This document shows positions 6,346 to 43,003 of a stretch of 64,000 bases of DNA, piece after piece; positions within the stretch are counted from its first letter, which is position 1, and the number at the start of each line of letters is the position of its first letter. The position numbers and the translations under genes are program-made. The notes under the pieces were generated by a model that ran no database searches, was not told where the DNA came from, and was given only the letters and a program-made list of their open reading frames with translations. The DNA lies in contig NC_135670.1 of the NCBI RefSeq assembly GCF_964188315.1, positions 992,001 to 1,056,000 of the forward strand, in the 5' to 3' direction. Source of the stretch: Podarcis muralis (Eukaryota).

Positions 6346-9300
6346 CTAAAGAAAATAAAAATGAAATGAGTGATAAATGAGTTCCAACAAATAAGGCATT
6401 AATTAGTTGGAATATGTATCAGAGATAAGTGAATATTGAAAACTGTTTGTACAATCTCCTGCCATTATGCATAATCCACAATAGGCTCTATGTTTTGATG
6501 GGGCTAAGGTGCATGGATTGTTCATCTACTCTGTCCTTCATCTGGAGTTAGTGATCAGAAACATGGCCTTTGGTTGTGCCCTTAGCTAGAGTTGGTCACA
6601 ATTCTTTGTGGTACAATGTGCAAAATAGTAATACCAGATTCCCTAGGGAAAGTTGAAATAGGTATTAGGAAGCATTATACAAAATAGCAGATTACGTCTC
6701 CTACCCATTTGATTCGAAATCATCCCATGTGGACACGAAGCACAATCATAGCAACAAAATGGCAGCCCCTCCTTCTTTTTCCTGCTGTAGCCTGGCTGGC
6801 AGCGATCATTACACAAGGCAAGGGGCAGCACCTAGCCATAAAAAGAGGAGAAAATGTAGCTCTCTTGTGCCTTGTAAACAACACAGTTCTAACCAAAGAC
6901 TGGTTGACATTATTCCAGAAAGGTGTGTTGTATGAGTAAATATATTGTAATGAAAATATTGGGAGTGAATGAGAAGGGATATTGAATTTTTAATCTGCAT
7001 AAAGATGGAGGATAGTTTTGAACCGCCAACCTTCTGATCCGCAAGTCCTATGTTGTGATTCGAGGACCCGCCCCCTTCGCTTGGGAATAAGAAAGGCACA
7101 CGGACACAGTATTTTAGGCTAATGGCCTAGAAAAGGCCACAACTTTATTGATTACATCATGTGAGAGGTATTGGCTTAGGCAGTGGAGAGAACAGTGAAG
7201 TTTGACTCCACCCACTTGGAGAGGGGTGAGTCTAGCAAGGGTTAACCACCAGTAGGGGGAGCCTGTTGATGCAAATGCAACTATAAGCTCTCCCCTGATG
7301 TCACCGGGGGTCATGCCATGGCCCCCAGCCCCCAGCAGGGCATCAGACAAGTTCCACGACTGCCGGATTCCTTTAACGGAATACCCATAAGTGAAGGGGT
7401 AGGCGATGGCCACACCCTGCCCTTCCATACACCAACAGCACATTCCAATGCTTAACCCCCAATACCGAAAAAGTTGTGACGAATTGCTACGAGGTAGGCG
7501 AAAAAACCAAGAGGCCGGTACCAATTACCATTTGGGGAAAAACTCCTACCAGGCCCCTTGGGCATCCAAGGCGACCAACCAAAGGTCCATAGCAAGGTCA
7601 GGCATTCCGGACTAACTAGAGGGAAGGGTGGGTGGATGACTCGATGAAAACCGGCAGAGGAATTGGAGGGGAGAGCTGCCGCGGCCGCATTTGAGCGGCT
7701 AAACCCCGCCCCTGGGCTTCCCGCCGATTGGAAGACTGACCGGGGGCATGTTGTGTCAGCAGTGACATCGGGCAGGGGGCGACATGCCCCCTGCAAGCCC
7801 GGGAGCAGGTCCCGATCACAACACCTCCCCTCCGGAACGAGGAGAGGCTCTCTGTGGTTTAATCCATAGCGCCACCCACGTCCCAAAGAATGTCTACATT
7901 AACATTTTTTGTATTTTTAATAGAAATACCTCATCTTATTAAAAGCAATAGTCCCACCTGATTAAAAGATCTTTGCCATGTGATGGCTTCCTTATCCATG
8001 CTGAAGTCTACATATTGTGATTCTTGTGGATTATACCTATACAATTGCTTATTAATGATAAAGAATGTCTACATTAACCTTATACGATACGATAGCCTTT
8101 ATTGTCATTGTCCCATACAGAACATAATTTGTATTCATAATAACAAGACCTAATTTTTTTAAAAAACACTGGTCCCACCTGATTAAAAAAGCTGTGCCAT
8201 GTGATGGCTTCCTTATCCATGCTGAAGTCTACATATTGTGATTCTTGTGGAACTATCTTTCCTACTTTCACACGGGAGAAGGTTTGGTTTGGAAAAGTAA
8301 CCCAGTTAATAATATCAAATCCACCTGCTAACTCCCCATTCTCATCAAAGGACACTAAGTCACCAGCACTGTTGTTGAAGGAGATACTCCTCAAGAACGA
8401 GTGCAGCTAGGCAGAAGAAAACAAAGGCAAAGTTTTAAAAAGGAGAGCTTTTGTGGATTATAGAAAGGAGAAAGTATCCATCCATATATTTCACACAATG
8501 GAAAGTAGTCCAAAACTGTGCAGTCTACAACATTTGGAGGACCTAAGTATTTCTAGGAAGTACATCTGGCCTGCCCCTTGTGTGAGGGTTCAGCTCTGGG
8601 GTCCATGTGCAAAGGCAAAACGGTGCCATGTCAGGAAGCCCTGGAACTGCCCTTCCTGCAAGGTGGGAGTGCAGGGAGAGAGGGAAAACAAAGTGGAGAG
8701 CAGCTCATGGTGGGTTTTCCCTGATCTCCATTTGTTTGTTTGTTTGTTTACTTTTCCTCAGAAAGAGATGCATTCACATCTTGACAGCCCATGTTCCTAG
8801 AGAGGCAGGGAAAGGGTACAGAGTGCCATAACTCCTTCAACTACTCCTGCAAATGGAAGGGAAGTACAGGTCCTATTTTGATTCTGGCTCCTTCAGCTTG
8901 AAGGAAAGGGAAAACAGTTAAGGATTGAAAAGAATGCGGGGATTGTTGTAGAGGAAAGGTAAAAGCTTTAAGAGGTTGTGTGTGTATATCTATGTCTCTG
9001 TGTTTGTGTGTATTCATTCTATGGACTGTGTGTCACCACCCATTAGATTAGCCCCAAGCAAAGGTTTGTTCGGAATAGGAAATCTCACCTGCCAAGGTTG
9101 CAGTTCTTGAGGATCGAGCCCACCTCCGCCTGCCATCATTCTGCGTTTTGACCTGGATGAGTGCATCTGATGTAAAGTATGTGCAATGGCATAAACCGCA
9201 TTATAGATACTGTAACTTTGGCCAGTCATGGTCATTTCAAAAATATGCCCAGGAAGGCTCTCCAGACTCTCATGGCCAGTGCAGGTGTTTGTGCTTTCCT

Positions 9301-12300
9301 TGCTCTCATTGGAAGCAGAAAATAAACAGTTGAATGCCCGTTGCCAAAAAGCCTGGAGGAACCCATCTCCCTTTGGAGAGTTGGGGTTCAGGGTCTGAAG
9401 GAAGTCTTTAAATCCCTGGACTTTCTCTGTGTGAATTGCAAAAGACAAGGCACCATCAAAGACTTGTATATCGTAATACCTTTGCATTGTTTCTGAAGAG
9501 AAAGCCCACTGGGCTGTCAAAATCCACACGGTGCCTGTAGACTTCTCTGCAATATCTTCAGCTAATGAAAAGAAATATTGCATCCATTTCACAACTGTAA
9601 TGGTCTCAGGTTCTGCACACAGAACTAATATGTTAACTTCTGAGGCCATCAGGAATGAGGACTTGGCCCGAATGAGTTCCAAGAAACTGATATCAACTAT
9701 GCCCTGAGATACGGCTGGTAGTTTTTCATTGAAAGCTGAACAGACTCCATGCTGGGAAAGCATTGGCACTAAGCTTTGCATAAAGCTCTCTCCATTTTCA
9801 TCATCGGATGCCACAATTCCCACCCAGGTCCACTGGAAATGTAGAAGTAGCATGACAATCCCTGCATATTGATATTTCTCATTGGGCACCGTTCGGTAGA
9901 ATATCTGGGGCTGCAACTCTGGGCTTCTCACTGGAGTTAATACGCAGTAAGCAATCTGGAGGAAGAAATCAATCCCACAAGAATTGGAGAGTTAGAGCAA
10001 ATGGTTATGGTTCATCCCAAGTATCTGCTTGAAGAACAAACCCATGAGAATTTCTCGACTCCATTTATGGATGCATGTTGATTTCACAAGAACATTCCGC
10101 ATATCTCCAGCAGTTGTTGATGGGGAAGAGGAGCAGGTTTCTCTGACCTCTTGCAACTGGCCTTGTGCAGCTTCCTGGGAACAGGAGGAAGACTCCTGCT
10201 GCTGCATTTGTCCAGTTCCAACCTCCCTGCTGCTTCCCAGTGACACATGGGAGACAAAGTCAGGCAAGTACCAAAGCCCCTCTCCTCCAACCACTACTGC
10301 ATAGCTCCCCACGTGATTTTGTAATAGTTTTTCCCCCACCTCCTCGCTCAGAAAAATGAACCAAAACAAAAGGAAGTATTGAAAACCAGGAAGATAACTA
10401 TTGTACCCGACGCAGAAGAGATTGACAGCCCCCACACTTACTATACCTGTGGAATCTTGTAGATGCTTAAGACAGTAGCCATGTGGAGGGAGATGTCAGA
10501 GTCAAGTCCGCCAATAACAGCTAACTTTTCTTTTTTCTTGTCACATATGAAGTTGGGGACAATCCTTTCTGTGATGGACAGAAGTTTCAGGGTGTTCTGA
10601 TAAGTCATCCTTGCATTTATGTAGCTGTCATAGACGTGGAACCCAAAGGTCATATTCGGTACGATATTAGGGCTCTCGTTTATCTCTTTCACAGCAAACA
10701 CCAGGGAGAGGGTATTCTGGTAGTACTTCAGTACTTCACTAAAAAAGAGTTATACTATGTGTCAGAGGTATTCTCCTCCTCTCCCTCTTATGCACATTGG
10801 TAACTTCCTGGTTGTCTCTGGCAAATCCCAAAATATTAAACATATATGCATTGTGTCTCTTGGCAGTATCCAGTCAGCTTTAAGAACATTGTTTAATTTT
10901 TTAAAGAAAAGTGTTTAATTTTGTGCATAACATTCATATCCTGAAATACACATAAGTAAATTAAGCTCTGATCTGCAGGTGTACCACTGGTGCCTAAAAT
11001 TATGGGTCTTCACAGGTGGCTAAAACAAACCGCCATTCCTCCTATGTTAATTTTGCGAAGGGGGACCTGGTTGCCACATCCTTCTCTTAACTCCTTATTT
11101 CCTTTAGGCAACCAATGGACACTCACTGGAAGAGAAGTTCCCAAGTCAGAAATTCTGAGTGGTGCCCCTCAGATAGTTAGTGGTTGGTGTAGGTGGGGAG
11201 TAGAGACCAGAGCACATCAGATGCAATAGGATCTATTCTTTCACAGTAACGGAGTTTCCACATTTCCCTCCTTCAGATAAAATTATGGCTGTACAACAAA
11301 TACTTTAGCCAATGTTAATCATACTCAGAGAAGGCCCATTAGGATTAATAGATCAGACTAACTTAGATGTATTAATTTCAATGGGTCTACTCTACATATA
11401 ACTCACTTTCGATACAGTGGTACCTCGCAAGACGCAGCGGCGTAGCGTGGGTTGTCAGCACCCGGGGCAAGGCAAGTAATTTGCGCCCCCTAACCCGTGG
11501 ATTTGCGCCCCCTAACCTGTGGATTTGCGCCCCCTAACCCATGGATTTGCCCTAACCCCAGATGTTGCGCCCGGTGCGGCCGGCCCCCCTGCACCCCCCA
11601 CGCTACGCCACTGGCAAGACGAATGCCTCGCAAGACAAAAAACTCGCTAGACGAAAGGGTTTTTTGTTTTTTGAGCTGCTTCACAAGATGATTTTCCCTA
11701 TGGGTTTGCTTCGTAAGACGGAAATGTCTTGCAAGTTTCTTTCCTTTTTCTTAACACCGTTAATACAGTTGCGACTTGACTTCGAGGAGCAACTCATAGA
11801 ACGCGGTGTGGTAGCCTTTTTTGAGGTTTTTAAAGACTTTGGTGATTTTTGAAGCTTTTCCAAAACTTTCCCGACACCGTGCATCACAAGACGAAAAAAA
11901 TCGCAAGACGACAAAACTCGCGGAACGAATTAATTTCGTCTTGCGAGGCACCACTGTACTTTGTTTTGCAAAACCAAGTTTGCAACTGCTGTTTTTATTA
12001 TCCAATATGGCTTACATTGCAAAGCAGAGAATATAACCCAAAATCTATGATATTCAGGTGTCACAGCTTCTGTGATGGTCAGATTAAATGATTGTGAATG
12101 TGAGGATCAAGGTTTGCTGCAAAGGAAAACCAGACCTTAAGGGTGTGAAAGGAAACACAGAGGGAGGATGAGGATGAAGTTGGGAGAAAGCGGTGAGAGC
12201 CATTGGATCAGGTGATAAGAAAGCAGAACAGGCAGAAGATAGAAAGCCCAAGAAGTGGAATCAAGCAAAAAAGAAGATGACCAGATCACAATGTAAAGAG

Positions 12301-13484: not shown

Positions 13485-13531
<47 letters not shown>

Positions 13532-17193: not shown

Positions 17194-18095
17194 TTAAAAC
17201 TGTCTTCTTATTAGCTGCTCCCTGCTGTTCAGCTCAGGCCTCAGTAAAATAACATAGCATTTGGGGGAAAAGATGCAGCCCAGTAACCCACAACTGGAGG
17301 CCAAGATGGAGAAGATCTCCACAGCCACCATGTATTTGCCCTTGGTGCTCAAGTAGGTTGGAACAAAGGAGAGCCACACACTGCAAAAGACCAACATGCT
17401 GAAGGTGATGAATTTGGCTTCATTGAAACTGTCAGGCAACTTTCTAGCTAGGAAAGCCACTGTGAAGCTCACCATGGCCAGCCAACCCATGAATCCCAGG
17501 ACACAATAAAACATAAGAGTGGAGCCTTCATTACATTCTAGTATTATTTCTTCAGTCATTGAGTCCATGTCAACGTCTGGGAAAGGAGGAGAAGTTGCCA
17601 GCCATGTGCTACAGATTGTGGCTTGAATAAAAGAGCAGGAAAGAACAATGGAGCTGGCCAGTTGTTTCCCCAGCCACTTCCTCATGCTGGACCCAGGCTT
17701 GGTAGCCATGAAAGCCAGAACCACAATGGCAGTTTTGGCCAAGATGCAAGAAATTGCCACTGAGAAGATCATGCCAAAAGCAGTTTGTCGAAGGAGGCAG
17801 GTGACTTCCTGAGGCTGGCCGATGAAGAGCAGAGCACAAAGGAAGGAGAGGAGGAGGAAAAGGAGGAGAATATAAGTGAGGTTGCGGTTGTTGGCTTTGA
17901 CTATGGGAGTATCTCTGTGCTTTGTGAATATCTGAAGCACCAAAGCTGTGATGCAGGAAAAGAAGAGGGCCAACGTGGCCAAACTGATCCCCAACGGTTC
18001 TCCATAAGACAAGAAAGTTTTGCCTTTGGGGAGGCAGCCGTCCTGTTCATTGTTTGCATATTGATCTCCAGGGCATTCTAAACAGTCGTCCATGT
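17194..18095 (-). CDS. V2R C exon 6 (7TM)
   Basis: 902 bp; DMDDCLECP...[11 protein letters not shown]...RRQF. Confidence 0.95.
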
Positions 18096-21000
18096 CTGAA
18101 AATGAAAAAGAAATAAAGAAATCGCAGTGAAACAAAAAGGTCTTTTGTCACGAAATTGGCACAGTGCATCTAAGAGATGCCAGAATGTATACTTGCTACT
18201 TCCATACTGTTTTCCCACTAGAGAAAGGAGCTTCTGATGCACAGGTAAAATTAAAACGTGTCATGCATTCCTTACCCTCCTTGTTTGAGATCTTCCCTTC
18301 TGGACACGGAAGGCAATCATAGCAGCAGAATGGCTTTCCTTCCTTCTTGTTCTTTCTATAACCTACATGACAATTCTCATTACACAGAGAAGTGGGTTGT
18401 GCCTGTTCATAAATGAAAGAAGGAAATTGTTTAGGAGTTTGCATCTCACTGACCTATCTTCTAATAGTAAACATGATAGTTAAGTAATAGATTGTTTTGG
18501 ATTTTTTGTTTTATCTAAAGATGATCTTAAATCCTGCTCTAACTGTAGCATTGGAACTTCTACCATTACTCCAGTACCTTTGCCTTTATGAAAACCATAT
18601 TGGTAAGTGAACTTCTTCAGAGATTAGCATGGCAATATCTTATCAAATTAGAAAATATTTGCTTGCAGAGTTACCTTCTTCATCACTTGCATGTGTCTTA
18701 CAATTTTCTTTTGCAGAGCCAGGCGCTAAAAATCATTGGTTTGTACCTGGGGTTTCTGTGAACATTCACTGTTAATCATTTAACTCTGAAGCCAATGTAA
18801 AGGAATGTGTTTTGTATCTTTACCATAATGCTGCAAACCAATGAGAAAGTTTAAATAATGGATTGACTGTGCCTGGAGTAATTGTGGGGTACAAATTAGG
18901 GCTGTGGAACAGATTTGGCCAAATCCCAAGATGAATTGGGCTGATTCTGAAGGAAAGGCAGGCAGTTTCTGCAAAAATCAGCACAGAGCTCTTTGCATCA
19001 GAACTTTCTAATAGCCCCACACTGCACTTTGGATATGTGTGCTTGTTCCAAGCTGGTGGACACATGAGTGCAGTCAAATGGAGCTGGATTGAAATCTCCA
19101 TTCACCAGCTTCTGAGTAGCGGTCCAGTCCTGCAGGCTGCAGGGGTCTTCTTCACAGTGGGTTCCTAGAAAGATTAAATCTTTCTGCTTTTGACCATTAT
19201 GTCTGAAAGAAGTTGATTTTGGCCCCAGGTGTTCCCTGGGCCAGACCCAGAATGGTTTGGGGGGCCTGTTCACAATCCTGAGAATGAAGGATGGAACAAT
19301 AATAATGTTTATATTAATTAAAAGACATGCTGGGCTTCCTCAAATTTCATTGACTAGTGACACTTTCTTTCTAGCTGAGACACTTCTGCAAATAGACATA
19401 GAAACAAGATAGCTTTCCTTTTATCAGTGCTACAGCCTGATATTTCCTTCACAGATTAAGTCCACTTCTGATAATTGATGAATCAATGTGTTGCAATGAG
19501 GCAGTTTTGGGACACTGAGCAAAAAACTAATGAAAACCTTGAATAAATTCTTACCTGGTTGAACCAGTTGGGCCACATGATACCCTCATCATGAATGGTT
19601 AACCTCTTCTCTGGGGGAGCTTGTGGGTCCATTGTTCCAACTTTGACTCTCAGAAAGGACTGATTTGGGAATGTGACCCAATTTACTATATCAAATCTAG
19701 CTACTAATTTTGCATTTTGGTCAAAAGAAACTTCTTCCCCAACACTATTATTAAATGAAACTCTTCCCAGAAAGTGGTGGAGCTAAGTTTGAAGAGGGAA
19801 AAAAGCAATAAATGAAGATGCCAAAAATGATTAAATATTAATAATATTGGTACAAATAGAGTGCTTATCTTTAGCATTTAAGAGGTATAGTTCATGGTCT
19901 CTTTAAAATATGTATGTTAGTGTCTTTCTCTCTGTGTTTTTAATGAGTCTCTTCTTCAGAAATGGATGGAGCTAAAAAGGAAAAAGGAATTAATGAGCTG
20001 TGCTATTTTCTAGACAAAGAGGTGCTGGAACTCACCACAAACACCTCCCTCGTTCCCTTGGAATGGAATGGCGCCCCCCTGAGAGGGAACAGAACTGAGT
20101 TCCAGCGAGTTCTGGTTGAAAAAAGCCCTGCTCATGAGGATATACAAAACAGGGACATTGTAGAACACAATATTCATTTAAATGTTTTGTGAAGGCTAAT
20201 TTCAATTGTAGCAATGTTCATTGTGGAGGTAAGATGTGGTTCTTTAAAGAATTACAGTAAGTCTTGGCCTAAATTTCAGGCCAAGACTTACTGTAGTGAC
20301 CAAAAACCCAAAAGAGAGTTTATCAAGGACATTAGAAATAATCCAAGACTTTGAAAAGGGAGTGGGATTTAAACTTAATAGCTCAAAAACAAAACTCCTG
20401 GTTAAAAACTTAACAATATAACAAAGAGAAGATTTGGAAAAAATCTTGAATCTGTCAAAAAGTAAAGTTCTTGGGAATATGGATAACCTCAAAAATTATC
20501 TATATATTTCAAGAGATTTATATAAAAACATGGACTGAAATCAAGAGAAACGTAGATATATGTAGTAGAGTGAAAATGTGTTTTTGGGGAATGATATCCA
20601 CCATAAAAATGAATGTGCTACGAACAATACTCCTTTTGTTTCAAAAAATTCCTGTAATGGCTGCCTTCAAAAATGGCAGAGACATTTCAAAATACATCTG
20701 GCAGGGAAAGAGACCAAGGATCAAACATAAACTCCTAATTGATATCAAGGAAAGGGGGGCTTCTCTCTGCTGGATCTTAAATTATACTACGAGGCAGCCT
20801 GCCTAACTTGGATTAGAGAGCAGTACACATTAGAAGATTCTGACCTATTAGATTTGAAGGACTAAGGCAATCGGTATGGTTGGCACGCTTATTTATCATA
20901 TGATAAAGTAAAGATTCACAAGAACTTCCTAAACCATATCATAAGAAAATCTCTGTATTCGGTTTGGACAAGATACAGAGATCTCTTGGAACCTAAAACA

Positions 21001-24000
21001 CCTGGTGGATATCCCCCCAGAGGCAAATACTGTGAAAAAGAAAAAATATGAAAGAGATTTGGCCCACATATAAGGTATTATTTAAAAAAGCCATTTCCCA
21101 TTCCCTGGGAAATGACGTTGTGGGCTGGGAGCCAGCCCTTCCCACGTGCACAGGGCGGGATAGCCCTTGCGCCATTGGATGGTCCTCGTCCACGTCATCC
21201 TTAGGTCATCCAATCCTGATGGTCTGGGGGTGTGGCACGGGCTATTTAAACTGCCTGTGGCCGAGGACTCGTCCTGTTTTCTCCCTCCCTCCCTCCCTTA
21301 GGTTAGGCTCTTTATCTCCTGACCTTGCTGCGGACCTCGGTTGATCGCCTTGGTTGTCCAAAGGGCCTGGTCAGAATTTTTTCCCACTTGACAAATTGGC
21401 ACTGGCCATTTGGTTTTTTGCCTACCTCGTAGCAAATTGTCACAACTTTGTAAGGTTTGGCAGTTAGGCATTGGAGTATTTGGTTGGAAGTGATGGGAGG
21501 TAGTAGCCTACCCCTCCTAATTTAAGGGTATTCCTTTAAAGGAATCTGGGGGTGTGGTCTCTGTCCAAAGCCCCAGACAGGGGGCTAGGGCCATGGCATG
21601 AACCCTAGCGATGACCCTGGGGGAGTTCCTCATTGATGTGCATCAGCAGGGCTCCCCCTACTGGTGGTTATCCCTTCCAAGACTCCTGCAGACGTGCAGG
21701 AGTTAGATATAGTTGTGTGGTTTCCCATGCCTAAGCCAATGCCACTCACATTCCGTAACCAATAAAGTTGTGGCCTTTTTCACCCATTAACCTAAAATAC
21801 TGTTTCATGTGTCTTTATTCCACTTCCCAGGTGGGTCTGGGACCTTGCCACGCAAAGAAGAGAACCAACTAAAACTCAAAAAAATTGAAGAAATAAGAGA
21901 CCACTTGACAGACTTGTTCCAATAGCATCAATTATTTGAAACATTTTAAGCCGATAAAAGAAAGGGATTTGCGACAGAACCTTCTAGATTAGAGGAAGAC
22001 CTGATTAATTCAAACGGGAAAACTTTGTCTAAAATGTACATGGGAAGTCAAGGAGGAGGAGGTTAAATCCATTATGATAAAATGGGCCCAGGACTTTGGG
22101 TACAACATCTTAATGAAGGACTGGAAAAATTAACATGAAATTCACTGCTTGCTACATATTGAGAGAAAACTTTTTGGAAATGCAGTATCGTTGTTACATG
22201 ACTCCATTAAAACTATCGAAAATGTACAAAAACATATCAAATCAATGTTGGAGGTGTGGAGAAGCAGTGGGTTTGATGTTGCACATGTGCTGGACATGTA
22301 AAAAAAAAAATAGAGTGTTTTGAGATGAGATCTATATGGAACTTAAGAAAATGTTCAGGGTTTCATTCAAGAGAGCCAGTGTGGTGTAGTGGTTAAGAGC
22401 GGTAGTCTTGTAATCTGGTGAACCGGGTTCGCGTCTCCGCTCCTCCACCTGCAGCTGCTGGGTGACCTTGGGCCAGTCACACTTCTCTGAAGTCTCTGAG
22501 CCTCACTCACCTCACAGAGTGTTTGTTGTGGGGGAGGAAGGGAAAGGAGAATGTGAGCCGCTTTGAGACTCCTTAAAGGGAGTGAAAGGTGNNNNNNNNN
22601 NNNNNNNNNNNNNNNNNNNNNNNNNNNNNNNNNNNNNNNNNNNNNNNNNNNNNNNNNNNNNNNNNNNNNNNNNNNNNNNNNNNNNNNNNNNNNNNNNNNN
22701 NNNNNNNNNNNNNNNNNNNNNNNNNNNNNTTTCCTCCTTCGAATAGTAGGTCCTGATATACCAAAGACCATAAGGGAATTATTTTTATAGGCAACTGTGG
22801 CCGCAAGAATCCTTATAGCTTCAAATTGGAAAGGCAAAAACATACCATTAAAATTGGAGTGGCAACAAAAGCTAGTGGAATATGCAGAGCTGACTAAGCT
22901 AACAGAAAAAATAAGAGACAACACAGACCTAATATTTATAAACAAATGGTGTTTATTTAAAAGATATATTAAAGAATGCTGTAACAATACAATGTCTGTG
23001 GCAGCCCTCGAATAACTTCTGTACTGAAATGATTTAGCGTAAAGAAGTATAATATCAATGCCAAGCTAATATCGAAAACTGAGATAGCTAGTGCACTAAG
23101 TAAATGAAGAAATAAAAGCATTTGGAGTAGACGGGAAGTCGATCAGTCTGGTGGAAGATTTTGAAGACTATGTTATCATAACAAGTATTAAAACTTTCTT
23201 GTTGTGGTTCATATATGGTGAATTTCGATTTGGTGTTGCGTTTTACTAAGTTGAATAAAGCGAAGAAGAAGAAGAAGAAGAAGAAGAAGAAGAAGAAGAA
23301 GAAGAAGAAGAAGAAGAAGAAGAGCCCTACATTTCATAGAACTTATACCACAAATATTAGACAGGATGTTCCTTTAGATAGGTGGAGAAGCTATGTAGAT
23401 AAGCTGCTCATCACTTTCCAGACATGATATCTTGTATCTAGCAATCTACAGCCATATTTTGCTATTCAAAGGACAAGTGAACCCACTTTAAAGTGATGGC
23501 AGCATTTCATCCACTATGTTTTCCTAACCATTAGTGGATAGTTACTTCCTCCCAGAGAGAAAAGTGGAATGGGTTTCCCCTACTGACAAAGGTACTCAGG
23601 AGAAGTCCCCATTTTAGCTCAGCTCCAGTGTTGATTACAGACATCTGTATTAACTGGAAGACAACTTTACCTGCCACGGCTGAAGATCTGTAAGTTTCCA
23701 CCTTGCTCCACCTGCCATTGCTCTACAATTTAATTTGGTGGACTGCATGGTGTGCAAAGCATGTGCCAAAATATAGATTGCATTGTAGATGCTGTAGCTG
23801 TGGGCTGTCATGCTCGTTTCAAAAACAGACCCAGGAAGGCTCTCAATATTCTCCTCCCCAGTGCAGAATTTGTCATCTTTCTTCTCTGAAGCAGGGTCAG
23901 GGAAGCCACAATTAAATGCCTCTTCCCAGAAAACCCTGAGAAAGCCATCTTCTTTTTCCAAGGTAGGGTTTCTCATCTGAATAAATTTCTGGAACCCTGG

Positions 24001-27000
24001 GAGATCCTTAGAGTGAACTGCAAAGGATAGAGCCCCATGGAGGAATGTGATGTTCCAACCTCTTTGAAAGGGAAATGAGGTGAAGTCCATCTGGGCTGTC
24101 ATAATCCAGACTTTTGCCTTGCCTTGCATTGACACATCATTCGTTTCTGCAAGTTTGGGTATCGTTCTCATTATCATAATTGTTTGAATTTCACCATGCA
24201 CAACTACAACATTGGCAGTGCTTCCCACAAGAATGTTCATTGTTTTCGAACCTTCTTCCACCATTTCATCAAATTCACCGGAAGAGGTAGCCGTGGGGAA
24301 TCGTTCTATATAATCAAAGCAGATACCCTTCTGGGCAAACATAGGGAGAACATTTTGTACAAATCTCTCTCCAGGGTCACCATGGACAAAAAGCACACCG
24401 ATCCACACCCAACGGAAATGCAGCAGTAACTGGAGGATCCCCTCGTATTGCTGAGTCCCATCTGGGAATATCCAGTGGGTGAAAAGGGCTTGCATGTCAT
24501 CATTCGTCACAGGAGAAGAGCCATAGATGAGCTGAAGAGGGTCATTGTTAAAATCAAGGGAGGAAAGGTGATAAAAAATGATGATATCAAAACACCAGTT
24601 AGACTCAAAAGCAAATTTCAACATATTAATTTAGCTTTTTGTTTATTTCTGATACTTTAGAATCTACTGTTTGGGGAACAGAAATGTCTTTCCATCAAAT
24701 AGAACAATTTTGCAGTTATGTTTATGGCAGAATTTGCTGTATCTAAAAGAGGATACAGGAAAGAACAGGTAAATAAATGCTTGTTCACAGAAAACCCTGA
24801 TAAAGCTTTCTCATCAGAAAAAATTCCTAATAATGATTCCTTGAGTTAACTGCGAAGGATAGAGAACCACGGAGGAAAGCTATTTCCCACCACCCTTGCG
24901 TAGGTTATGATATGAAATCCACCTGGACTGTTCTAATCCAAACTTTTGCCTTGGTTTGTATTGGCGCATCATCTGTTTCTGCAATATTGGGCATCCTTCT
25001 CATTATCATAATGTTGTGATTTCCAACATTCACACCACTCCTAGGGGCCGAGGCAGTTTCATTCACACCAATATTCAAGGGGCATCCAGATCCTCATGGC
25101 ATCACACGCATGACGTCAGGATGTTGTGTGACATCATGTGCATTAAGTCATGACGTCATGCCACATTGCACAGGGGCCCCCTCATTCCTCTTAAGAAGAT
25201 GGCACCTCTGCAGGATCCCGTCTGCATGGGTCTCCTTCCAGTTAGGAGGGGAGAGATCTCCTAGAAAGAGAAGACACCCAAACCCTTAAGAGGACTGGGG
25301 TGATCCCCTGGGGCTGTTGTGCTATTTGGAGAAGCTCAGGAGTGGGATTGATAGAAGGTGGGGAAACGGACAGAAATACTATCTTGTATAAGAACTGAAA
25401 CTGAAACTGTACCTCCTATGCAATGAGGTTTAAGAAACTGAATTAATGAAAAATGGAAATGAGCTGATTGTTTACCAATTGTAACATCAAGCTGAAAATA
25501 AGCAAACGCCATTTTAAATAAGCTCTAAGTTCACTACCTTGTTTTGAAGCCCGTAACATACACTAAATTGAATATTAATAAGTTAAATGTTTCCTGAAAG
25601 AACTTTTATCTCCTGATACATCTTTTGTCCTACCAACTTTATGCTGCAAAATAAATCTTTCTTATTTGTTCAACTTCTGCCTGAAGTTGACCTTTACCTC
25701 ACACATGCTAGATAACCCACGGTGGTTATAGAGTTTTACAGAGGGGGGGGGGTCTGCTTCAGAAGGATTCCAATATCACTTATTTCTGTTGATTTGGAAT
25801 GTTATAGTTATATTGGGAAATATTTAAGTAATATTTCAGCAGGCCTAGCAAACACCAGTTGTGCTACCACAGGCAGTAGACGTTTTGTTACAGTCCTACA
25901 CAGGAGTAAAGTGTCCAATGAGGAATTCTTCCACCTGAGTTTTTCAGGAGGTGTGGAACTGAAGCAGACATATTTTCCACAACCTGCATTTTTGGTTGAA
26001 AAATACCAACATAAACCCATTATTTGCCATTCAATTACCAGCATGCAACCCAATGAGACTATTCAGAGACAAATATAAATGGCTTTCATTGATGACGCAT
26101 GTCCCATGCAGACCTCTTACTCTTGGCATCTTGTACGTAGACAGGATGGTTGACATGTGGAGACATAAATCAGGTTTTGGCCCCCCAATGACTGCCTTTG
26201 GAGTCTCCTGAACATCACACTTGTAGTTGGGGAGGAGTCTTTCTTGGCTAGAGAGAAGTTCCATGGAGGCTTGGTAGGTCCAGCTTGCACTGAAATGGCT
26301 GTTATAGATGTGGAAACCCAGAGACATATTGGGCAATATTTGGGGATTTTCATTTATCTCTTTCACAGCAAATGCCAAAGCCAGGATATGCTGGTAGAGT
26401 TGTGTCATTGGTCTGTATGGAGAGCGACATAGTGCATAACAATTCACATTCACAAACATAGAAAGTGTAGGGATATATAGAAACACAACCCTGGATGTTT
26501 CGCTGTGCTGAACATCTAACTCCTGCCACGTCACAGGCGGCCTGGCCCTGATTGCTACTAGTTTTCCTCTACAGAAGAGGAGGACAAAGTCTGGTTACCA
26601 AAAACTTATAATAAATCCACCTCTAATCTGAATGAATTACCACTTGGCTTTGCTTCAAGTCAAATATTAAATAAGAAATCCTTCGCTCACCATGGTAAAT
26701 GAGCGAAAAGCCTTAACAAAGTGAATGGGGATGTTACATTCTATGCTGCCTTGCAAACTTCTTTAAAAAACTGAACACTGGTATAAGCCTACCATATAAG
26801 AAGAAGAAGGTTACCACACACTGCAGAAGTGAGTTTGAATTATGAGATTTGCCCCCAGGTCTCAGAATTACATGGGGGGGGGAGGGTGGTAGTATTCATC
26901 ATACACTAGTGGCCAATATTGTGAAAACATTTTGGAAAGTATGTGTCTTTGTAGAAGATTATGAAAAGCTTGGCCTATCCCTCAAGATCCCAAAAACCAA

Positions 27001-30021: not shown

Positions 30022-30923
30022 CTATTTGCTCCTCAGAATCAAGTGGCCTTTGCTGTTCAAGTCGGGCCTCAGAAGAATGATGTACAATTTGGGGGCAAAG
30101 ATACAACCCAGCAAACCTGCGCTGGAGGCCAAGATGCAAAAGACCTCCACAGCCACCATCTGCTTTCCTTTGGTGCTCAGATAAGAGGGAACAAAGGACA
30201 GCCAAACGCTGCAGAACACCAACATGCTGAAGGTGATGAACTTGGCTTCGTTGAAACTGTCCGGCAACCTCTTGGCCAGGAAAGCCATAGTGAAGCTGAC
30301 CATGGCCAGGAATCCCAGATAACCCAGGACAGAATAAAACATCGCGACAGAACCTTCGTTGCATTCCACAATGATTTCCCCCGCCAGAGAGTTCATGTCC
30401 ACATCTGGGAATGGAGGAGCCGTATAGAGCCAAGCAGCACAAATGCTGGTTTGAACTGAGCAGCAGCCAAGAAGCACAGAGTTTGTGAGAGATTTCCCCA
30501 CCCATTTCCTCATCCTGGATCCTGGTTTGGTGGCCATGAAAGCCAGAACCACCGTGATGGTTTTGGCCAAGACACAAGACACAGCAATGGAGAAGATGAT
30601 GCCAAAGGCCGCTTGTCGTAAAGAGCAGCTGACTGGGTGAGGCTGGCCAATGAAGAGCAAGGAGCAGAGGAAGCAGAGCAAGAGGGCAAGGAGCAGAGTG
30701 TAGGTGAGGTCCCGGTTGTTGGCTTTGACAATGGGAGTGTCCCCATTCCTGGAGAAGACGCCAAGTATCCAAGCTGTGACCAGAGAAAAGGCCAGAGCCA
30801 AGGAAGCTAAAAGGAACCCTAAAGGTTCTGCGTAGGAAAGAAAATGTTGGCGTTTGGGGAGGCATTGATCTCTGTCCTTGTTTGGAAATTGGTCATCTTG
30901 GCAGTGGAAACAATCATCCATAT
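30022..30923 (-). CDS. V2R D exon 6 (7TM)
   Basis: 902 bp; 299-aa ORF, near-identical to B exon 6. Confidence 0.95.
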
Positions 30924-33900
30924 CTGAAGAAAATCAAATGAGTGATGAGTTTCAACAAATAAGAGTAAGGAGACCATTTTTTGGCTCACACACCTAAAAC
31001 TAACCACTCCTAAGATGTAGCAAATGATGTCTTCTACCCGTTTGATTTGAAATCATCCCATTTGGACACGAAGCACAATCATAGCAACAAAATGGCAGCC
31101 CCTCCTTCTTTTTTCTGCTGTAGCCTGGCTGGCAGCGATCATTACACAAGGCAAGGGGCAGCACCTAGCCATAAAAAGAGGAGAAAATGTAGCTCTCTTG
31201 TGCCTTGTAAACAACTCAGCTTTAACCAAAGAGAAGAGATCAGTTGACTGATTAACATTATTCCAGAAAGGTGTGTTGTATGCATAAATATATTGTAATG
31301 TAAATATTGGGAGTTAATGAGAAGGGATACTAAATTTTTCATCTGCATAAAGATGGAGGATGGAGAGAGGACAGAGAAGACAACAGACTTTGAAATACAG
31401 GGAGTTGAGAGAAGGTAAAATAGGAAGCACATATATTAAACTCGGGACGCGGGTGGTGCTGTGGGTTAAACTACAGAGCCTAGGGCTTGCCGATCAGAAG
31501 GTCGGCAATGGGAGCTCACCCCGTTGCGGGGATTCGAACTGCCGACCTTCTGATTGGCAAGTCCTAGGCTCTGTGGTTTAACCCACAGCGCCACTCATGT
31601 CTCAGACTTGGGTTATACTTAAACAATATTTTCTAAATTTTCTACATTAACCTTATTATTTCAATTCTTAATAAAAATAACTCATTTTCAAAAACCTTTG
31701 GTCCCACCTGATTAAAAGATCTGTGCCATGTGATGGCTTCCTCATCCATGCTGAAGTCTACATTTTGTGAATCTTGTGGAACTATCTTTCCTACTTTCAC
31801 TCGGGAGAAGGTTTGGTTTGGAAAAATAACCCAGTTAATAATATCAAATCCACCTGCTAGCTCCCCATTCTCATCAAAGGACACTAAGTCACCAGCACTG
31901 TTGTTGAAGGAGATACTCCTCAAGAACGAGTGCAGCTAGGCAGAAGAAAACAAAGGCAAAGTTTAAAAAAGGAGAGCTTTTATGGATTTTAGAAACAAGA
32001 AGTATCCATCAATGTATTTCACACAATGCAAAGAAGTCCAAAACTGTGCAGTCTACAACATTTGGAGAACATAAGTATTTCTAGTAAGTACAGGTGGCCT
32101 GCCCCTTGCCTGAGGGTTCAGCTCTGGGGGCAATGTGCAAAGGCAAAATGGTGCCATGTCAAAAAGCCCTGGAACTGCCCCTCCTGCAAGGCGGGTGTGC
32201 AGGGAGAAGGGGGCAAAGAAATGGAGAGAAGCTCCTCTTGGGTTTTCCCTCCTCCTCATTTATTTATTTACTTTTCCCTACCAACATAAATGAACTTAAC
32301 TTGCAGGTTCACTATAATCAATGAACATCACTAGAAGCGAGTTAAAAAACAGACCAGGTAATTACATTTGAAAATAGCCCTATACAGTGGTGCCTTGCAA
32401 GACGAAATTAATTCGTTCCGTGAGTTTTGTCGTCTTGCGATTTTTTTCGTCTTGCGAAGCACGGTGTCGGGAAAGTTTTGGAAAAGCTTCAAAAATCACC
32501 AAAGTCTTTAAAAACCTCAAAAAAGGCTACCACACCGCGTTCTATGAGTTGCTCCTCGAAGTCAAGTCGCAACTGTATTAACGGTGTTAAGAAAAAGGAA
32601 ACAAACTTGCAAGACGTTTCCATCTTGCGAAGCAAGCCCATAGGGAAAATCGTCTTGCGAAGCAGCTCAAAAAACAAAAAACCCTTTCGTCTAGCGAGTT
32701 TTTTTGTCTTGCGAGGCATTCGTCTTGCGAGGTACCACTGTATGCTCCTCTTTAGTGCAAAAACAAATGCAGGTTTTAGAAAATAGTTGGTGTTGGTGGA
32801 CAGAACGGGTGGGCAGCCATGGGTAGAAACAAACCTTAATTTTTTTCAAACATATTCTTAATTCTTGGTAATCATCCTTTTCCCCCCCTAAACTTTGCAA
32901 AGGTTTACTCTGAATAGCAAATCTTACCTGCCAAGGCTGCAGTTCTTGAGGATCGAGCCCACCTCCGCCTGCCATCATTCTGCGTTTTGACCTGGATGAG
33001 TGCATCTGATGTAAAGTATGTGCAATGGCATAAACCACATTATAGATACTGTAACTTTGGCCAGTCATGGTCATTTCAAAAATATGCCCAGGAAGGCTCT
33101 CCAGACTCTCATGGCCAGTGCAGGTCTTTGTGCTTCCCTTGCTCTCATTGGAAGCAGAAAATAAACAGTTGAATACCTGTTGCCAAAAAGCCTGCAGGAA
33201 CCCATCTCCATTTGGAGAGTTGGGGTTCAGGGTCTGAAGGAATTCTTTAAATCCCTGGACTTTCTCTGTGTGAATTGCAAAAGACAAGGCACCATCAAAG
33301 ACTTGTATATCATAATACCTTTGCATTGTTTCTGAAGAGAAAGCCCACTGGGCTGTCAAAATCCACACGGTGCCTGTAGACATCTCTGCAACATCTTCAG
33401 CTAATGAAAAGAAATATTGCATCCATTTCACAACTGTAATGGTCTCAGGTTCTGCACACATAATTAATATGTGACCTTCTGAGGCCACCAGGAAAGAGGA
33501 CTTGGCCCGAATGCGTTCCAAGAAACTGCTATCAACTATGCCCCGAGATAAGGCTGGTAGTTTTTCATTGAAAGCTGTACAGATTCCATGCCAGGGAAGC
33601 ATTGGCACTAAGCTTTGCATAAAGGTCTCTCCATTTTCATCATCGGATGCCATAATTCCTACCCATGTCCATTGGAAATGTAGAAGTAGCCTGACAATCC
33701 CTGCATATTGATATTTCTCATTGGGCACCGTTCGGTAGAATGTCTGGGGCTGCAACTCTGGGCTTCTCACTGGAGCTAATACGCAGAAAGCAATCTGGAG
33801 GAAGAAATCAATCCCAGAAGAATTGGAGAGTTAGATCAAACGGTTATGGTTCATCCCAAGTATCTGCTTGAAGAACAAATCCATGAGAATTTCTTGACTC

Positions 33901-40130: not shown

Positions 40131-41002
40131 CTGTATTTTTCGCCCTATAGGACGCACCGGCCCATAGGATGCACCTATTTTTCAGGGGGGGGGGGAAATC
40201 AAGGGAAAAAAATATGATTTCCCCCCCGCAGCTCTGGGAGCAGTGGACAGGCTGCACGCAGCCTGTGCGCTACTCCAAGACCTTCTCCCTGCTTTTGCGG
40301 GAGGTGGCGGAATTCCCCCACCTCCCGCAAAAGCCCGCAGGAGCCCCGCGTGACTCCTGCAAGCTTTTCGACCAGGAGGGAGAAGGGACTGAAACGGCCA
40401 GTCAGTCCCTTCTCCCTCCTCGGGGAAAAGCCCCCAAGAGCCGCTCGCTCTTTAAAGGGTGCACGGCTCCTGCGGGTTTTTCTAGGAGGTGGGGGAATCC
40501 CCCCCCCTCGTAGAAAAGCCAGCAGAAGCCGCGGAGCCCCTTTAAAGAGCGCATGGCTTTTGCGGGAGGTGGGGGAATTCCCCCATCTCCCGCAAAAGCC
40601 CAAAGGAGGGTTGGAGAGTAGCGGGAAGGCGCCTTCCCGCTGCCCCCCATCCTCTGGGGCTGGCAATGGGGGAAGCTGCTTTCCCCCACCGCTGCTTTCC
40701 CCCACCGCCAGCCTTGAAGCCGGGTTGGAGAGTAGCGGGAAGGTGTCGTGCGCCTTCCCGCTGCCCCCCATCCTCTGGGGCTGGCGATGGGGGAAGCGTT
40801 GCTTTCTCCCACCGCCAGCCTCAAAGAGCAGACTCTCCTGGCTTCAGCGGAAGCAACGCGAAGCCTCCGGAGCGCAGGCTTCGGAGGCTTCGTATTGCTA
40901 TCGCTGAAGCCAAGGAGTCTGCATTTGCCCCATATGACGCACACACATTTCCCCTTCATTTTTGGAGGGGAAAATGTGCGTCTTATAGGGCGAAAAATAC
41001 GG
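40131..41002. mobile_element. Tc2-like mariner MITE, 872 bp, with internal GC-rich palindromic repeats
   Basis: TA|CTGTATTTTTCGCCCTATAGGACGC ... GCGTCTTATAGGGCGAAAAATACGG|TA. Confidence 0.9.
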
Positions 41003-41254
41003 TACTTGAGTTCTGATCATACCTCTTCCTTGTCTGGATGGACAACAGAGAGGAGTGCTTGTAGGAACTGGCCTACTTTACAAAGGTAAAAGTCACATCC
41101 ACTGTTCCACTCACTTATCCCTCTGGCTTGTCTACCATTGGAGGGTTGTGTGATGAGCCCTGCAGAACGGACACTCTGGGACACTCTGAACCACCACCAC
41201 GCCACTGACCCCCCCACTCCGAACCACCATCACCCCTCCACTGTCTTTACTTTT

Positions 41255-41795
41255 GCCCATGGCATGACAATTTTCCACCTTCCCATTTCAACTCTCTGGC
41301 ATTATCTAGCAATTCTAAAATATAGATGCGCTTTTACTCTCGCAAGTTTGAATGTCATGCCCTCGGCTGGACTTGAGGGACAATTCCAACAGATTCCACA
41401 TGAAAAACGCTTATGTCCCTGTGGAGATGGCAGTACCAAATCGGTGGCGCATGTCCTTCTGGCTTGCACTCTGTATAAAGACTTGAGGAATGAGGTTATC
41501 CCCCCTCTTTTATTGCCCATTCTGGGCCACCCAGCCATTACCACAGTGTCCTTTCTCTTGGCAGATCAAGATGAGCAGGTGACAGCAAAGGCTGCAAGGT
41601 TTTTAGCTGGGGCAATCAGAATAAGATCCACTATTTGACTATTGATTCAAAACCCTAAACTGTATTTTACATAATTGACTTTTTATTTCTATTCTTTGCA
41701 CATCATATTGTTGTTTTACTGCTATGGCCGATGGCTGATGCAAATAAAGATTGATTGATTGATTGATTGATTGATTCATTCATTGATTCATTCAT
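41255..41795 (+). mobile_element. Non-LTR retrotransposon 3' end (CCHC-type C-terminus, RTEX-like; clade uncertain)
   Basis: RLCPCG...SVAHVLLAC motif, stop codon, AATAAA, (ATTG)n tail. Confidence 0.65.
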
Positions 41796-42191
41796 TTATT
41801 CAACTTTGCTTGCTGGGCTTTCTCCCCACCTCCTCCTGGCATAAGAAGCCAGGGCGGTTTGTGTCAATCAGTGATGTCCTGTTCAAATCAGGACAATTGG
41901 TGTGTGTGACAGGATTCAGCTTGGATGGGCAGGCTTAGTTGGAACAGGAGGAGCGAACTGTAGGAAGTTAGGTTGGAGGTGGTGGGGGAGCTCTCCTTCC
42001 CACCCCAACATCAGCTGACTTGCAGGGAGTTTCATTGTACTTGGTTACGTCATGCCCCCTGTTTCTTCTGAGAACTGGCTGCCATGGCCAAACACTGCAG
42101 AAAATAAGATTAAACTCTGCATGCATTACCTGATGGGGGAGGTTGCAACCCTGCTTGGTTTTGGGGTGCCAGTGAGTCCCTCCTGGGAAAG

Positions 42192-43003
42192 CGTGTTCTC
42201 ATTAATAGAGAGCACGTGTTGCGGTTGGGGCCAGGCAAGACACCCCGCTGTTGCCAGGCAGTTTATTTAAATGGGCCTGGCAAGGACTGGTTGCCCGAGT
42301 TGCTGGGGTAAAATTGATGTTGCCAGTTTGGGGGTGGGAACTGAGATTATTTAAGCTGTGCACACAGTGATCTGCTTTCTCTTTCGCTGTGGGCACCAGA
42401 TCACCTGCCCGCCCTCCCTTGTTTGGGCTTGTGCTTTGACATTGCTATGCCTGTCATGGGGTCGTCTGCCATTGGGGCAGGGGCCTGGTAGGAATTTTGT
42501 CCATCTGGCTGATTGGCTGGTGCCATTTGGTTTTTGCCTACTGCGTAGCAAATCGTCACAACTTGTAAGGTTGGCGGTTAGGCATTGGTTAAAATTGGTT
42601 GGTGGAGGGGTAAGGATTGGCTGGGCCTGCCCCTCCAATGCTGCTGTTGCAAGGGAATTCCGTTAAAGGAATTCAGGGGCTTACCATCCCTTTGTCCAAA
42701 CCCTTTGTCGGGTTTGGGTCGTGTAAGCCCCTGGGAGCATGTGGGGAGAAGCTGAGGGCCTGTGTCGCAGCTCCAGTTCTCCCCAATATTGTTTCCCCTC
42801 ACTGACTTTCGCTGGAATCCAGGAGTCAGTTCTGTCCCCAAGGTGGGGGGACAGATAGTCATAACCAATGCCTAAGCAACTACTCACATCTATGTATGCT
42901 AATAAAGTTGTGGCCAAAATTATGCCAAAAACCTCAAACAAAAATTCTGTGTGATGTGTGAGTTATTGGGGTCAGGGTGTTTTGGTGGACCTCAGCACGC
43001 AAC
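42192..43003 (+). mobile_element. Unclassified LTR-like element with terminal hairpin, copy 3
   Basis: Hairpin CGTGTTCTC-ATTAATA-GAGAGCACG followed by TGTTGCGG ... CACGCAAC; AATAAAGTTGTGGCC at 42901. Confidence 0.72.

What the first reader, a model, noticed from the sequence alone, without database searches (positions are those of the whole stretch)
7051..43003. Three diverged ~750-bp elements, each capped on one side by a hairpin conserved in structure but not sequence
Seen: copies at 7051-7847 (-), 21091-21854 (+) and 42192-43003 (+) share a central block and AATAAAGTTGTGGCC. Each body starts (T/C)GTTG(T/C)G and ends CAC(A/G)(A/C)..; terminal inverted repeats run ~16 bp in copy 1 and are shorter in the others. 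Directly 5' of the body each has a 24-25-nt hairpin with a 9-bp stem of unrelated sequence: CCTCTCCTC-GTTCCG-GAGGGGAGG, CATTTCCCA-TTCCC-TGGGAAATG and CGTGTTCTC-ATTAATA-GAGAGCACG. Two stems use a G-T wobble on the same strand, and all three are preceded by AG. No consistent TSD; copy 2 sits in an A-run of an L1 with 3-4 extra bases. Known: ordinary solo LTRs have 4-6-bp TSDs and no external hairpin. A subterminal inverted repeat followed by a terminal hairpin is described for Helitron2/Helentron elements, and tyrosine-recombinase retroelements (DIRS/Ngaro) lack TSDs. Inference: a non-autonomous family that combines LTR-like signals (CCAAT/TATA, poly(A)) with rolling-circle- or recombinase-type ends; possibly unclassified.
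Basis: partly seen in the sequence, partly recalled or inferred. Interest (0 to 1): 0.75.

Follow-up and report, generated by a model that had tools for sequence, protein, structure and literature searches.

The report
LTR-like lizard repeat with hairpin cap
Three old copies of one roughly 800-base jumping-gene remnant in a wall-lizard-type genome each carry a small hairpin just outside one end that arrived with the element, and their insertion sites lack the usual fixed footprint, so the family is real and oddly built but cannot be classified from three copies.

Summary
The window has exactly three homologous copies (about 73% identical), each with a 9-bp-stem hairpin next to the TG start of the body. 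By my estimate from hairpin density, chance would give this about once in 10^7-10^8.

In all three copies the hairpin is part of the inserted DNA:
- c1: a paralogous empty site at 31.5 kb.
- c2: a sister L1.
- c3: a flanking direct repeat.

Target duplications are irregular: at most 1 bp, 3-4 bp and about 118 bp. All three bodies end in CA.

The hairpin always has a pyrimidine-rich 5' arm and a purine-rich 3' arm next to TG, like a polypurine tract. It folds better on the sense strand. The stems are not unrelated: three positions are invariant and five changed on both sides while staying paired.

Best reading (0.42): solo LTRs of a retrovirus-like family whose U3 end keeps the plus-strand-primer hairpin, integrated irregularly. 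Main rival (0.25): a non-autonomous Helentron/Helitron2-type element, whose end architecture matches.

The assembly gap lies outside all three copies.

The parts
7824..7847 (-). c1 hairpin leader: 9-bp stem, 6-nt loop. Bases 7824-7844 came in with the element. The outer CCT (7845-7847) is also present at the empty site.
7051..7823 (-). c1 body, 773 bp, TG...CA. Its terminal inverted repeat has 20 matched positions with three single-base gaps. It is the most CpG-rich copy (32 CpG), so probably the youngest.
21091..21115 (+). c2 leader, 25 nt: C, then the hairpin 21092-21114 (9-bp stem, 5-nt loop), then A.
21116..21854 (+). c2 body, 739 bp, CG...CA, inserted in an L1 ORF2 remnant.
21855..21857 (+). 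c2 duplicated target bases AAG, equal to 21088-21090 (AAAG if base 21854 is counted as target).
   Evidence: a sister L1 at 54700-54960(-) shows exactly 4 extra bases in the reading frame
42192..42216 (+). c3 hairpin leader: 9-bp stem, 7-nt loop, one T-G wobble.
42217..43001 (+). c3 body, 785 bp, TG...CA.
42073..42191 (.). Upstream copy of the direct repeat of about 118 bp that flanks c3. It ends where the hairpin begins.
43002..43115 (.). Downstream copy of the same direct repeat. It starts at the CA end of c3 and contains an expanded (CA)n run.
   Evidence: local alignment score 21 against a genomic null of 8.8 +/- 1.6; 0 of 398 null pairs reach it
31533..31688 (-). Paralogous empty site for c1: the same SINE and the same non-SINE flank in the duplicated V2R gene. 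The junction lies between 31566 and 31565 (CCT^AGG).
7135..7149 (-). Invariant poly(A)-signal block in c1 (also at 21761-21775 and 42901-42915). It pairs with an invariant upstream block (GTCACAACTTT) to close a structured domain of about 330 nt.

Best explanation
The three elements are LTRs (U3-R-U5, TG...CA) of one retrovirus-like family of a lacertid lizard, now present as single LTRs.

Each keeps, just outside its U3 end, a 24-25-nt hairpin. The 3' arm of that hairpin is the polypurine tract that normally sits in front of a 3' LTR and primes plus-strand DNA.

Inferred mechanism:
1. In this family the plus-strand-primer region is not trimmed off. It is copied into the left end of the DNA.
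2. That end is therefore a poor integrase substrate.
3. The U5 end is joined to the target at its CA. The hairpin-bearing end is joined by host repair.
4. This gives target duplications of irregular size.
5. Later recombination between the two LTRs leaves a solo LTR that still carries the leader.

Shown: the family, the hairpin, its being part of the insert, the CA ends and the irregular duplications. Inferred: LTR identity, the primer role of the hairpin, one-sided integration and the former full-length provirus.
For: - Homology end to end, with TG (CG in c2)...CA ends, CCAAT- and TATTTAAA-type boxes at homologous columns, and an invariant AATAAA block about 85 nt from the 3' end followed by a GT-rich stretch.
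- The hairpin is inside the insert in all three copies. c1: paralogous empty site CCT^AGG. c2: sister L1 reading frame. c3: limits of the flanking repeat.
- Purine counts are 0, 2 and 2 of 9 in the 5' arms and 9, 7 and 7 of 9 in the arms next to TG. This is the polarity of a polypurine tract.
- As RNA the hairpins fold better on the sense strand in c1 and c3 (-16.2 and -12.2 against -11.0 and -8.5 kcal/mol). The T-G wobble is at the same stem position in both.
- Five of nine stem positions changed on both sides and stayed paired. None is broken.
- All three bodies end in CA, and duplications are at most 1, 3-4 and about 118 bp. Experiments show that when one retroviral DNA end is a poor integrase substrate, the good end is joined by integrase and the other by host enzymes, with host duplications far longer than normal, or deletions (PMC5041404).
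- PPT and PBS sequences can stay on cDNA ends and guide integrase-independent insertion (PMC11042837).
- The c1 left junction shows a 3-nt overlap (CCT) between the target and the full 9-bp stem, as in repair-mediated joining.
Against: - There are only three copies, two of them old.
- No full-length copy, PBS, gag-pol or second LTR was seen, so LTR identity rests on short signals.
- I know of no natural LTR family reported to keep its primer region on the 5' LTR as a rule.
- Three of three copies with the same 24-25-nt leader means a systematic process, whereas the cited experiments describe exceptional events.
- The architecture of an inverted repeat followed by an external stem-loop is the published signature of Helentron/Helitron2 ends.
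- The purine-rich arms of c2 and c3 are imperfect (7 of 9).
- The central structured domain is equally significant on both strands, so it does not show an RNA stage.
Confidence: 0.42

Rival explanations
1. A non-autonomous element of the Helentron/Helitron2 (HLE2) group, read on the opposite strand. It would have a terminal inverted repeat at the 5' end, its partner 24-25 nt inside the 3' end, and a stem-loop after it. A Rep-helicase acting on single-stranded DNA next to the hairpin would move it by rolling circle, normally without target duplication.
For: - Published HLE2 ends are short terminal inverted repeats (about 11-18 nt), a stem-loop after the right repeat about 20-30 nt from the end, no TSD and T-rich targets (PMC3627910; PMC11417382; PMC4067079).
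- c1 has such a repeat plus a 24-nt external hairpin.
- c1 has at most 1 bp of duplication.
- On that strand c2 sits in a T run. In c2 and c3 the hairpin is followed by C and then Ts.
- Variable TSDs of 7-19 bp are reported for some Chlamydomonas Helitron2 elements.
- Hairpins conserved in structure rather than sequence are usual for these elements.
Against: - c1 lies at CCT^AGG, not between T and T.
- No significant 5' hairpin involves the other repeat (z about 0).
- c3 has a flanking duplication of about 118 bp.
- On the strand where the hairpin is 3'-terminal, c1 and c3 carry a central A-C mismatch.
- TG...CA ends, the polypurine polarity and the ordered promoter and poly(A) signals would all be coincidence.
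- Only canonical Helitrons are described in the one lizard studied in detail (PMC3014272).
- No Rep-helicase ORF is among the ten large ORFs scanned in the window.
Confidence: 0.25
2. A retroelement unit integrated as a circle, or by a tyrosine recombinase (DIRS/Ngaro-like or an undescribed type). A one-LTR circle made of the LTR plus the 24-nt hairpin would be opened at the U5/hairpin border. This gives hairpin-LTR with no target duplication.
For: - No fixed TSD.
- LTR-like signals.
- The same permutation in three of three copies.
- In circular form the hairpin would sit between the two inverted repeats as one long palindrome, resembling a recombination site (inference).
- A terminal RNA hairpin has been proposed to prime DIRS-1 reverse transcription (PMC7192593).
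Against: - No inverted terminal repeats with an internal complementary region, and no split direct repeats, are seen.
- Protein-binding sites should be conserved in sequence, not only in pairing.
- A crossover inside the palindrome would split it between the two ends, and it is not split.
- No recombinase gene is at hand.
- The c3 duplication is unexplained.
Confidence: 0.1
3. A long SINE-like RNA copied into the genome by a LINE or Penelope-type reverse transcriptase (target-primed reverse transcription). The hairpin would be the 3' recognition stem-loop on the opposite strand.
For: - Target duplications of very variable length (0 to over 100 bp) are typical of target-primed insertion (established knowledge).
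- All three copies are full length.
- LINE reverse transcriptases are present in the window.
- Penelope-type hammerhead motifs are present in the window.
Against: - No A tail or microsatellite tail.
- No hammerhead core in any copy on either strand.
- The hairpin folds worse on that strand.
- The long terminal inverted repeat and the TG...CA ends have no role in this model.
- The three 3' tails differ, which a sequence-specific LINE partner would not tolerate.
Confidence: 0.06
4. Ordinary solo LTRs. The hairpins and the missing TSDs would be chance or decay.
For: LTR-like anatomy. c2 has a duplication of 3-4 bp, the size class of some retroviruses.
Against: - Hairpins at the same place in three of three copies is about a 10^-7 to 10^-8 event by my estimate from the density.
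- The c1 empty site shows 21 extra bases and no 4-6-bp duplication.
- c2's duplication flanks hairpin plus LTR, not TG...CA.
Confidence: 0.03

Closest known systems
Solo LTRs of endogenous retroviruses and LTR retrotransposons
   Same: About 0.8 kb, TG...CA ends with a short inverted repeat, promoter-like boxes then a poly(A) signal and a GT-rich stretch, and a purine-rich tract immediately 5' of the TG.
   Different: A solo LTR made by LTR-LTR recombination should not keep the polypurine-tract region and should be flanked by a fixed 4-6-bp duplication touching TG and CA. Here a 24-25-nt hairpin leader is part of the insert, and duplications are at most 1, 3-4 and about 118 bp.
Helentron / Helitron2 (HLE2) and their non-autonomous derivatives (HINE, DINE-1)
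   Same: One inverted repeat at the terminus, the other 20-30 nt inside the opposite end and followed by a short stem-loop. There is usually no TSD. Hairpin pairing is kept through compensatory changes. Non-autonomous copies are 0.5-1 kb.
   Different: c1 is not at a T^T site. There is no 5' hairpin. There is one 118-bp flanking duplication. The hairpin is better on the other strand. LTR-type signals are present. No Rep-helicase partner is known here.
Aberrant 'one bad end' retroviral integrations (ASLV and HIV-1 experiments, PMC5041404) and integrase-independent Tf1 insertion (PMC11042837)
   Same: One normal CA junction. The other end carries extra viral sequence or is joined with short homology. 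Host duplications are far longer than normal, or there is none.
   Different: Those are rare laboratory events in whole proviruses. Here the same leader is seen in three diverged copies, so it would have to be the family's rule.
DIRS/Ngaro tyrosine-recombinase retroelements
   Same: LTR-like repeats and insertion without target duplication. They are common in reptiles, fishes and amphibians.
   Different: Their defining repeat layouts (inverted terminal repeats plus an internal complementary region, or split direct repeats) are not present in these units.

Membership tests
Integrase-inserted LTR retroelement (solo LTR) | TG...CA termini with a short inverted repeat | tested here: met
   c1 and c3 are TG...CA and c2 is CG...CA. 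The c1 repeat has 20 matched positions with three single-base gaps.
Integrase-inserted LTR retroelement (solo LTR) | Fixed 4-6-bp target duplication directly abutting TG and CA | tested here: not met
   The c1 paralogous empty site shows at most 1 bp duplicated and 21 extra bases outside TG. In c2 the 3-4 bp flank hairpin plus LTR. c3 has about 118 bp.
Integrase-inserted LTR retroelement (solo LTR) | U3-R-U5 order: promoter boxes, then poly(A) signal, then GT-rich U5 | tested here: inconclusive
   The motifs are present in the right order, and AATAAA is invariant. There are no RNA data, and the TATA-type box is absent from c1.
Integrase-inserted LTR retroelement (solo LTR) | Full-length relatives with two LTRs, PBS, PPT and gag-pol | not testable with these tools
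Helentron/Helitron2 (HLE2) | Inverted repeats of 11-18 nt, one terminal and one subterminal followed by a stem-loop 20-30 nt from the end | tested here: met
   Clear in c1. The repeats are weaker in c2 and c3, but the hairpin is present in all three copies.
Helentron/Helitron2 (HLE2) | Insertion between T and T without target duplication | tested here: not met
   c1 lies at CCT^AGG. c2 is compatible with a T run. c3 has a 118-bp flanking repeat.
Helentron/Helitron2 (HLE2) | 5' hairpin involving the 5' inverted repeat (Helitron2 as defined in PMC3627910) | tested here: not met
   Folding the first 80 nt on that strand gives z of 0.14, -0.20 and 0.66.
Helentron/Helitron2 (HLE2) | Autonomous partner encoding a Rep-helicase and sharing the ends | not testable with these tools
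   There is no genome access. The ten large ORFs scanned are LINE reverse transcriptases and V2R exons.
Penelope-like element | Hammerhead ribozyme in the terminal repeat | tested here: not met
   No Rfam hit and no CTGANGA core on either strand of any copy. The same regex finds a Penelope-type pair at 56183(-) and 57059(+).
DIRS/Ngaro | Inverted terminal repeats plus an internal complementary region, or split direct repeats, and a tyrosine recombinase | tested here: inconclusive
   Neither repeat layout is seen in the three units. Full-length elements cannot be looked for.

The most novel reading that the evidence does not exclude
A lizard retroelement lineage whose mobile unit habitually has one integrase-type end (U5 ending in CA) and one hairpin-capped end. 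The capped end would be joined by host repair or by a non-integrase enzyme, so LTR-type elements would spread without the canonical target duplication. Alternatively, a single LTR plus a 24-nt primer hairpin is itself the transposing unit. Either would be a mode of LTR-element insertion not described for natural families.
Probability: 0.15. Interest if true: 0.75.

Novelty: new variant of a known kind. Interest (0 to 1): 0.45.

Why it matters
If the leader and the irregular junctions prove to be the rule for this family, there are two possibilities:
- A natural retrovirus-like lineage normally integrates with one 'bad' end. So far this is known only from mutant or drug-treated viruses, and it has consequences for host rearrangements at insertion sites.
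- Helentron-type rolling-circle elements exist in lacertid lizards disguised by LTR-like signals. That would matter for repeat annotation in squamates.

In both cases automatic annotators would mislabel these copies as ordinary solo LTRs. With three copies it remains a well-documented oddity rather than a demonstrated new mechanism.

Tried and rejected
MORE COPIES. None could be obtained.
- Exact-pattern scans for two conserved blocks found nothing in metagenome contigs or viral contigs.
- Earlier findings of this scan held no look-alike by sequence.

CODING. c1 has two open frames (131 and 136 codons).
- Neither has a Pfam match or a word-search relative.
- The frames are not kept in c2 or c3, where single-base indels occur.
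- Coding is therefore rejected. I ran no further search on such a weak frame.

KNOWN RNA FAMILIES. No Rfam family matches inside the copies, either at gathering thresholds or at E up to 5.

PENELOPE-LIKE ORIGIN. Rejected for lack of a hammerhead core.

CUT-AND-PASTE TRANSPOSONS. Those with fixed TSDs (TA, TWA, 8 bp and others) were rejected from the c1 and c2 empty sites.

HAIRPIN COPIED FROM THE TARGET (fold-back synthesis). Rejected, because 21 of 24 bases in c1 and all bases in c2 are absent from the empty sites.

STRAND OF THE CENTRAL DOMAIN. Column-shuffle tests give z -7.7 (sense) and -8.2 (antisense), so this is uninformative.

COVARIATION TOOL. MAFFT did not align the hairpins in structural register, so the stem pairs were tabulated by script instead.

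LITERATURE. One literature search returned nothing useful.
Full report
WHAT IS THERE. The window is part of a vomeronasal type-2 receptor (V2R) gene cluster of a lacertid lizard. Ten large ORFs are V2R exons or LINE reverse transcriptases. A V2R exon is 97% identical to Podarcis muralis proteins.

BLASTN and an nhmmer profile built from the three copies find exactly three members of the family:
- c1: 7051-7847 on the minus strand.
- c2: 21091-21854 on the plus strand.
- c3: 42192-43001 on the plus strand.

They align end to end. c1 and c2 are 73.5% identical over 525 bp. The core of c2 and c3 is 82% identical. The first 250 nt are barely alignable. c1 has the most CpGs (32, against 17 and 17) and is probably the youngest.

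The assembly gap at 22592-22729 lies 738 bp beyond c2. It is outside every copy and every junction used below. Nothing here depends on continuity across it, and I did not try to fill it.

THE HAIRPINS ARE REAL AND NOT CHANCE. Each copy has a 9-bp stem with a loop of 5-7 nt that ends 0-1 nt before the TG (CG in c2) that starts the body. Hairpins of this grade begin at only 56-79 positions per strand in the 64 kb. I estimate the chance of three out of three at that exact place as about 10^-7 to 10^-8.

- Counting from the outside, positions 1, 3 and 7 are the same pair in all three copies.
- Positions 2, 4, 6, 8 and 9 differ on both sides and are still paired.
- Position 5 is T-G, T-A and T-G.
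- No pair is broken.

Because the arms are pyrimidine-rich and purine-rich, shared bases alone do not prove common descent. The picture still fits one ancestral hairpin kept by compensatory change.

THE HAIRPIN CAME IN WITH THE ELEMENT.

c1 sits in the tRNA-like head of a SINE.
- The region 31.0-31.8 kb is a paralogous copy of the whole c1 locus. It belongs to a duplicated V2R gene and aligns in the non-SINE flank as well.
- That copy is empty and reads CCT^AGG across the site. A third SINE at about 60.0 kb reads the same.
- The filled site therefore holds 21 extra bases plus the TG...CA body, with at most one duplicated base.
- The outer three stem bases (CCT) are also present at the empty site. 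Either they are target sequence, or the junction formed in a 3-nt overlap.

c2 sits in an L1 ORF2 remnant.
- A second, diverged L1 at 54.7-55.0 kb aligns at the protein level across the site.
- The host L1 is in register when exactly four bases are removed. The insert is therefore leader plus body, flanked by AAG or AAAG.

c3 is flanked by a diverged direct repeat of about 118 bp.
- The repeat starts at the CA end of the body and stops where the hairpin begins.
- Its collinear 59-nt block scores 21 against 8.8 +/- 1.6 for 398 control pairs from the window.

So the mobile unit is hairpin plus body in three of three copies. The target duplications are at most 1 bp, 3-4 bp and about 118 bp.

FEATURES THAT POINT TO A RETROVIRAL-TYPE LTR.
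- All three bodies end in CA. Two start with TG.
- c1 has a terminal inverted repeat with 20 matched positions and three single-base gaps.
- CCAAT-type and TATTTAAA-type boxes lie at homologous columns in the first 200 nt. They are not strictly conserved in all three copies.
- An invariant AATAAA block lies about 85 nt from the 3' end and is followed by a GT-rich stretch.
- The arm of the hairpin next to TG is purine-rich (9, 7 and 7 of 9) and the other arm pyrimidine-rich. This is the place and the composition of a polypurine tract.
- As RNA the hairpins of c1 and c3 are clearly more stable on this strand.

The central 440 nt form a conserved set of long-range stems, including one that pairs the poly(A)-signal block with an upstream invariant block. 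The signal is equally strong on both strands, so it does not show an RNA stage.

FEATURES THAT POINT TO A HELENTRON/HELITRON2-TYPE ELEMENT. Read on the other strand, the anatomy is the published one: a terminal inverted repeat, its partner 24-25 nt inside the other end, and a stem-loop after it, normally without target duplication and with T-rich targets (PMC3627910; PMC11417382; PMC4067079). c1 has essentially no duplication and c2 lies in a T run.

Against this reading:
- c1 is not at a T^T site.
- No 5' hairpin involves the other repeat.
- c3 has a long duplication.
- The hairpin has a central A-C mismatch on that strand in two copies.
- The only lizard Helitrons I found described are canonical ones without inverted repeats (PMC3014272).

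MOST LIKELY MECHANISM (INFERENCE). I favour an LTR family whose left DNA end keeps the plus-strand-primer region.
- Retroviral and Tf1 cDNA ends can retain PPT or PBS sequence (PMC11042837).
- When one end of ASLV or HIV-1 DNA is a poor integrase substrate, integrase joins the good end and host enzymes join the other. Host duplications are then 'hundreds or thousands of bp' long instead of 4-6 bp, or there are deletions (PMC5041404).
- This pattern matches a precise CA junction on one side, a leader-bearing junction on the other with a 3-nt overlap in c1, and duplications of at most 1, 3-4 and 118 bp.
- Later LTR-LTR recombination would leave a solo LTR that keeps the leader, because the leader lies outside the 5' LTR.

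The weak point is that the same leader in three diverged copies means this would be the family's normal behaviour. I know of no natural family for which that is described.

WHAT COULD NOT BE DONE. The decisive evidence is more copies and any full-length relative.
- Pattern scans of public metagenome and viral contigs were empty.
- The open frames in c1 have no relatives and are not conserved.
- No Rfam family and no hammerhead core occur in the copies.

VERDICT. The family has an asymmetric, hairpin-capped end and no fixed target duplication. But the polypurine polarity, the strand preference and the CA ends make an unusual LTR at least as likely as a rolling-circle or recombinase element.

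My probabilities:
- 0.42: LTR with a retained primer hairpin.
- 0.25: Helentron/Helitron2-type element.
- 0.10: circle or tyrosine-recombinase route.
- 0.06: target-primed retroposition.
- 0.03: ordinary solo LTRs plus chance.
- The remainder: something not considered.

Noticed in passing
window 5444-10435, 17194-24624, 30022-33770, 50702-59436: At least four V2R genes, each with 7tm_3 and ANF_receptor exons. The best protein matches are Podarcis muralis 'vomeronasal type-2 receptor 26-like' at 97%, so the genome is a lacertid (wall-lizard type). c1 and c2 lie in V2R introns and c3 lies between genes.
   Followed up: partly
window 6650-8250 versus 31018-31780: Intron sequence of two V2R paralogues is 85-90% identical, including a shared SINE. 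The copy at 31 kb lacks c1, so c1 inserted after this gene duplication.
   Followed up: yes
window 56183 (-) and 57059 (+): Two near-identical hammerhead-type motifs (a CTGAAGA core, a helix, then GAAAC GTC) lie in inverted orientation about 0.9 kb apart. This is the layout of a Penelope-like element with inverted terminal repeats. Rfam did not report them even at E up to 5.
   Followed up: partly
window 1841-1990 (-): A full-length U2 snRNA-like sequence scoring 43.1 bits, just under Rfam's gathering score of 46. It is probably a U2 pseudogene.
   Followed up: no
window 40370-40990 and 57130-57211: Many weak microRNA-precursor-like matches on both strands at the same places. This indicates long perfect or near-perfect palindromes or simple inverted repeats, not real miRNA genes.
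   Followed up: no
window 43019-43048: One copy of the c3 flanking duplication has acquired a (CA)n microsatellite about 30 bp long where the other copy has unique sequence of the same length.
   Followed up: partly
window 7135-7500, 21430-21775, 42555-42915: Inside each copy two invariant inverted-repeat pairs close a domain of about 330 nt centred on a short palindrome (TTCC.TTAAAGGAA). One pair includes the poly(A)-signal block. The consensus fold scores z about -8 on both strands.
   Followed up: partly
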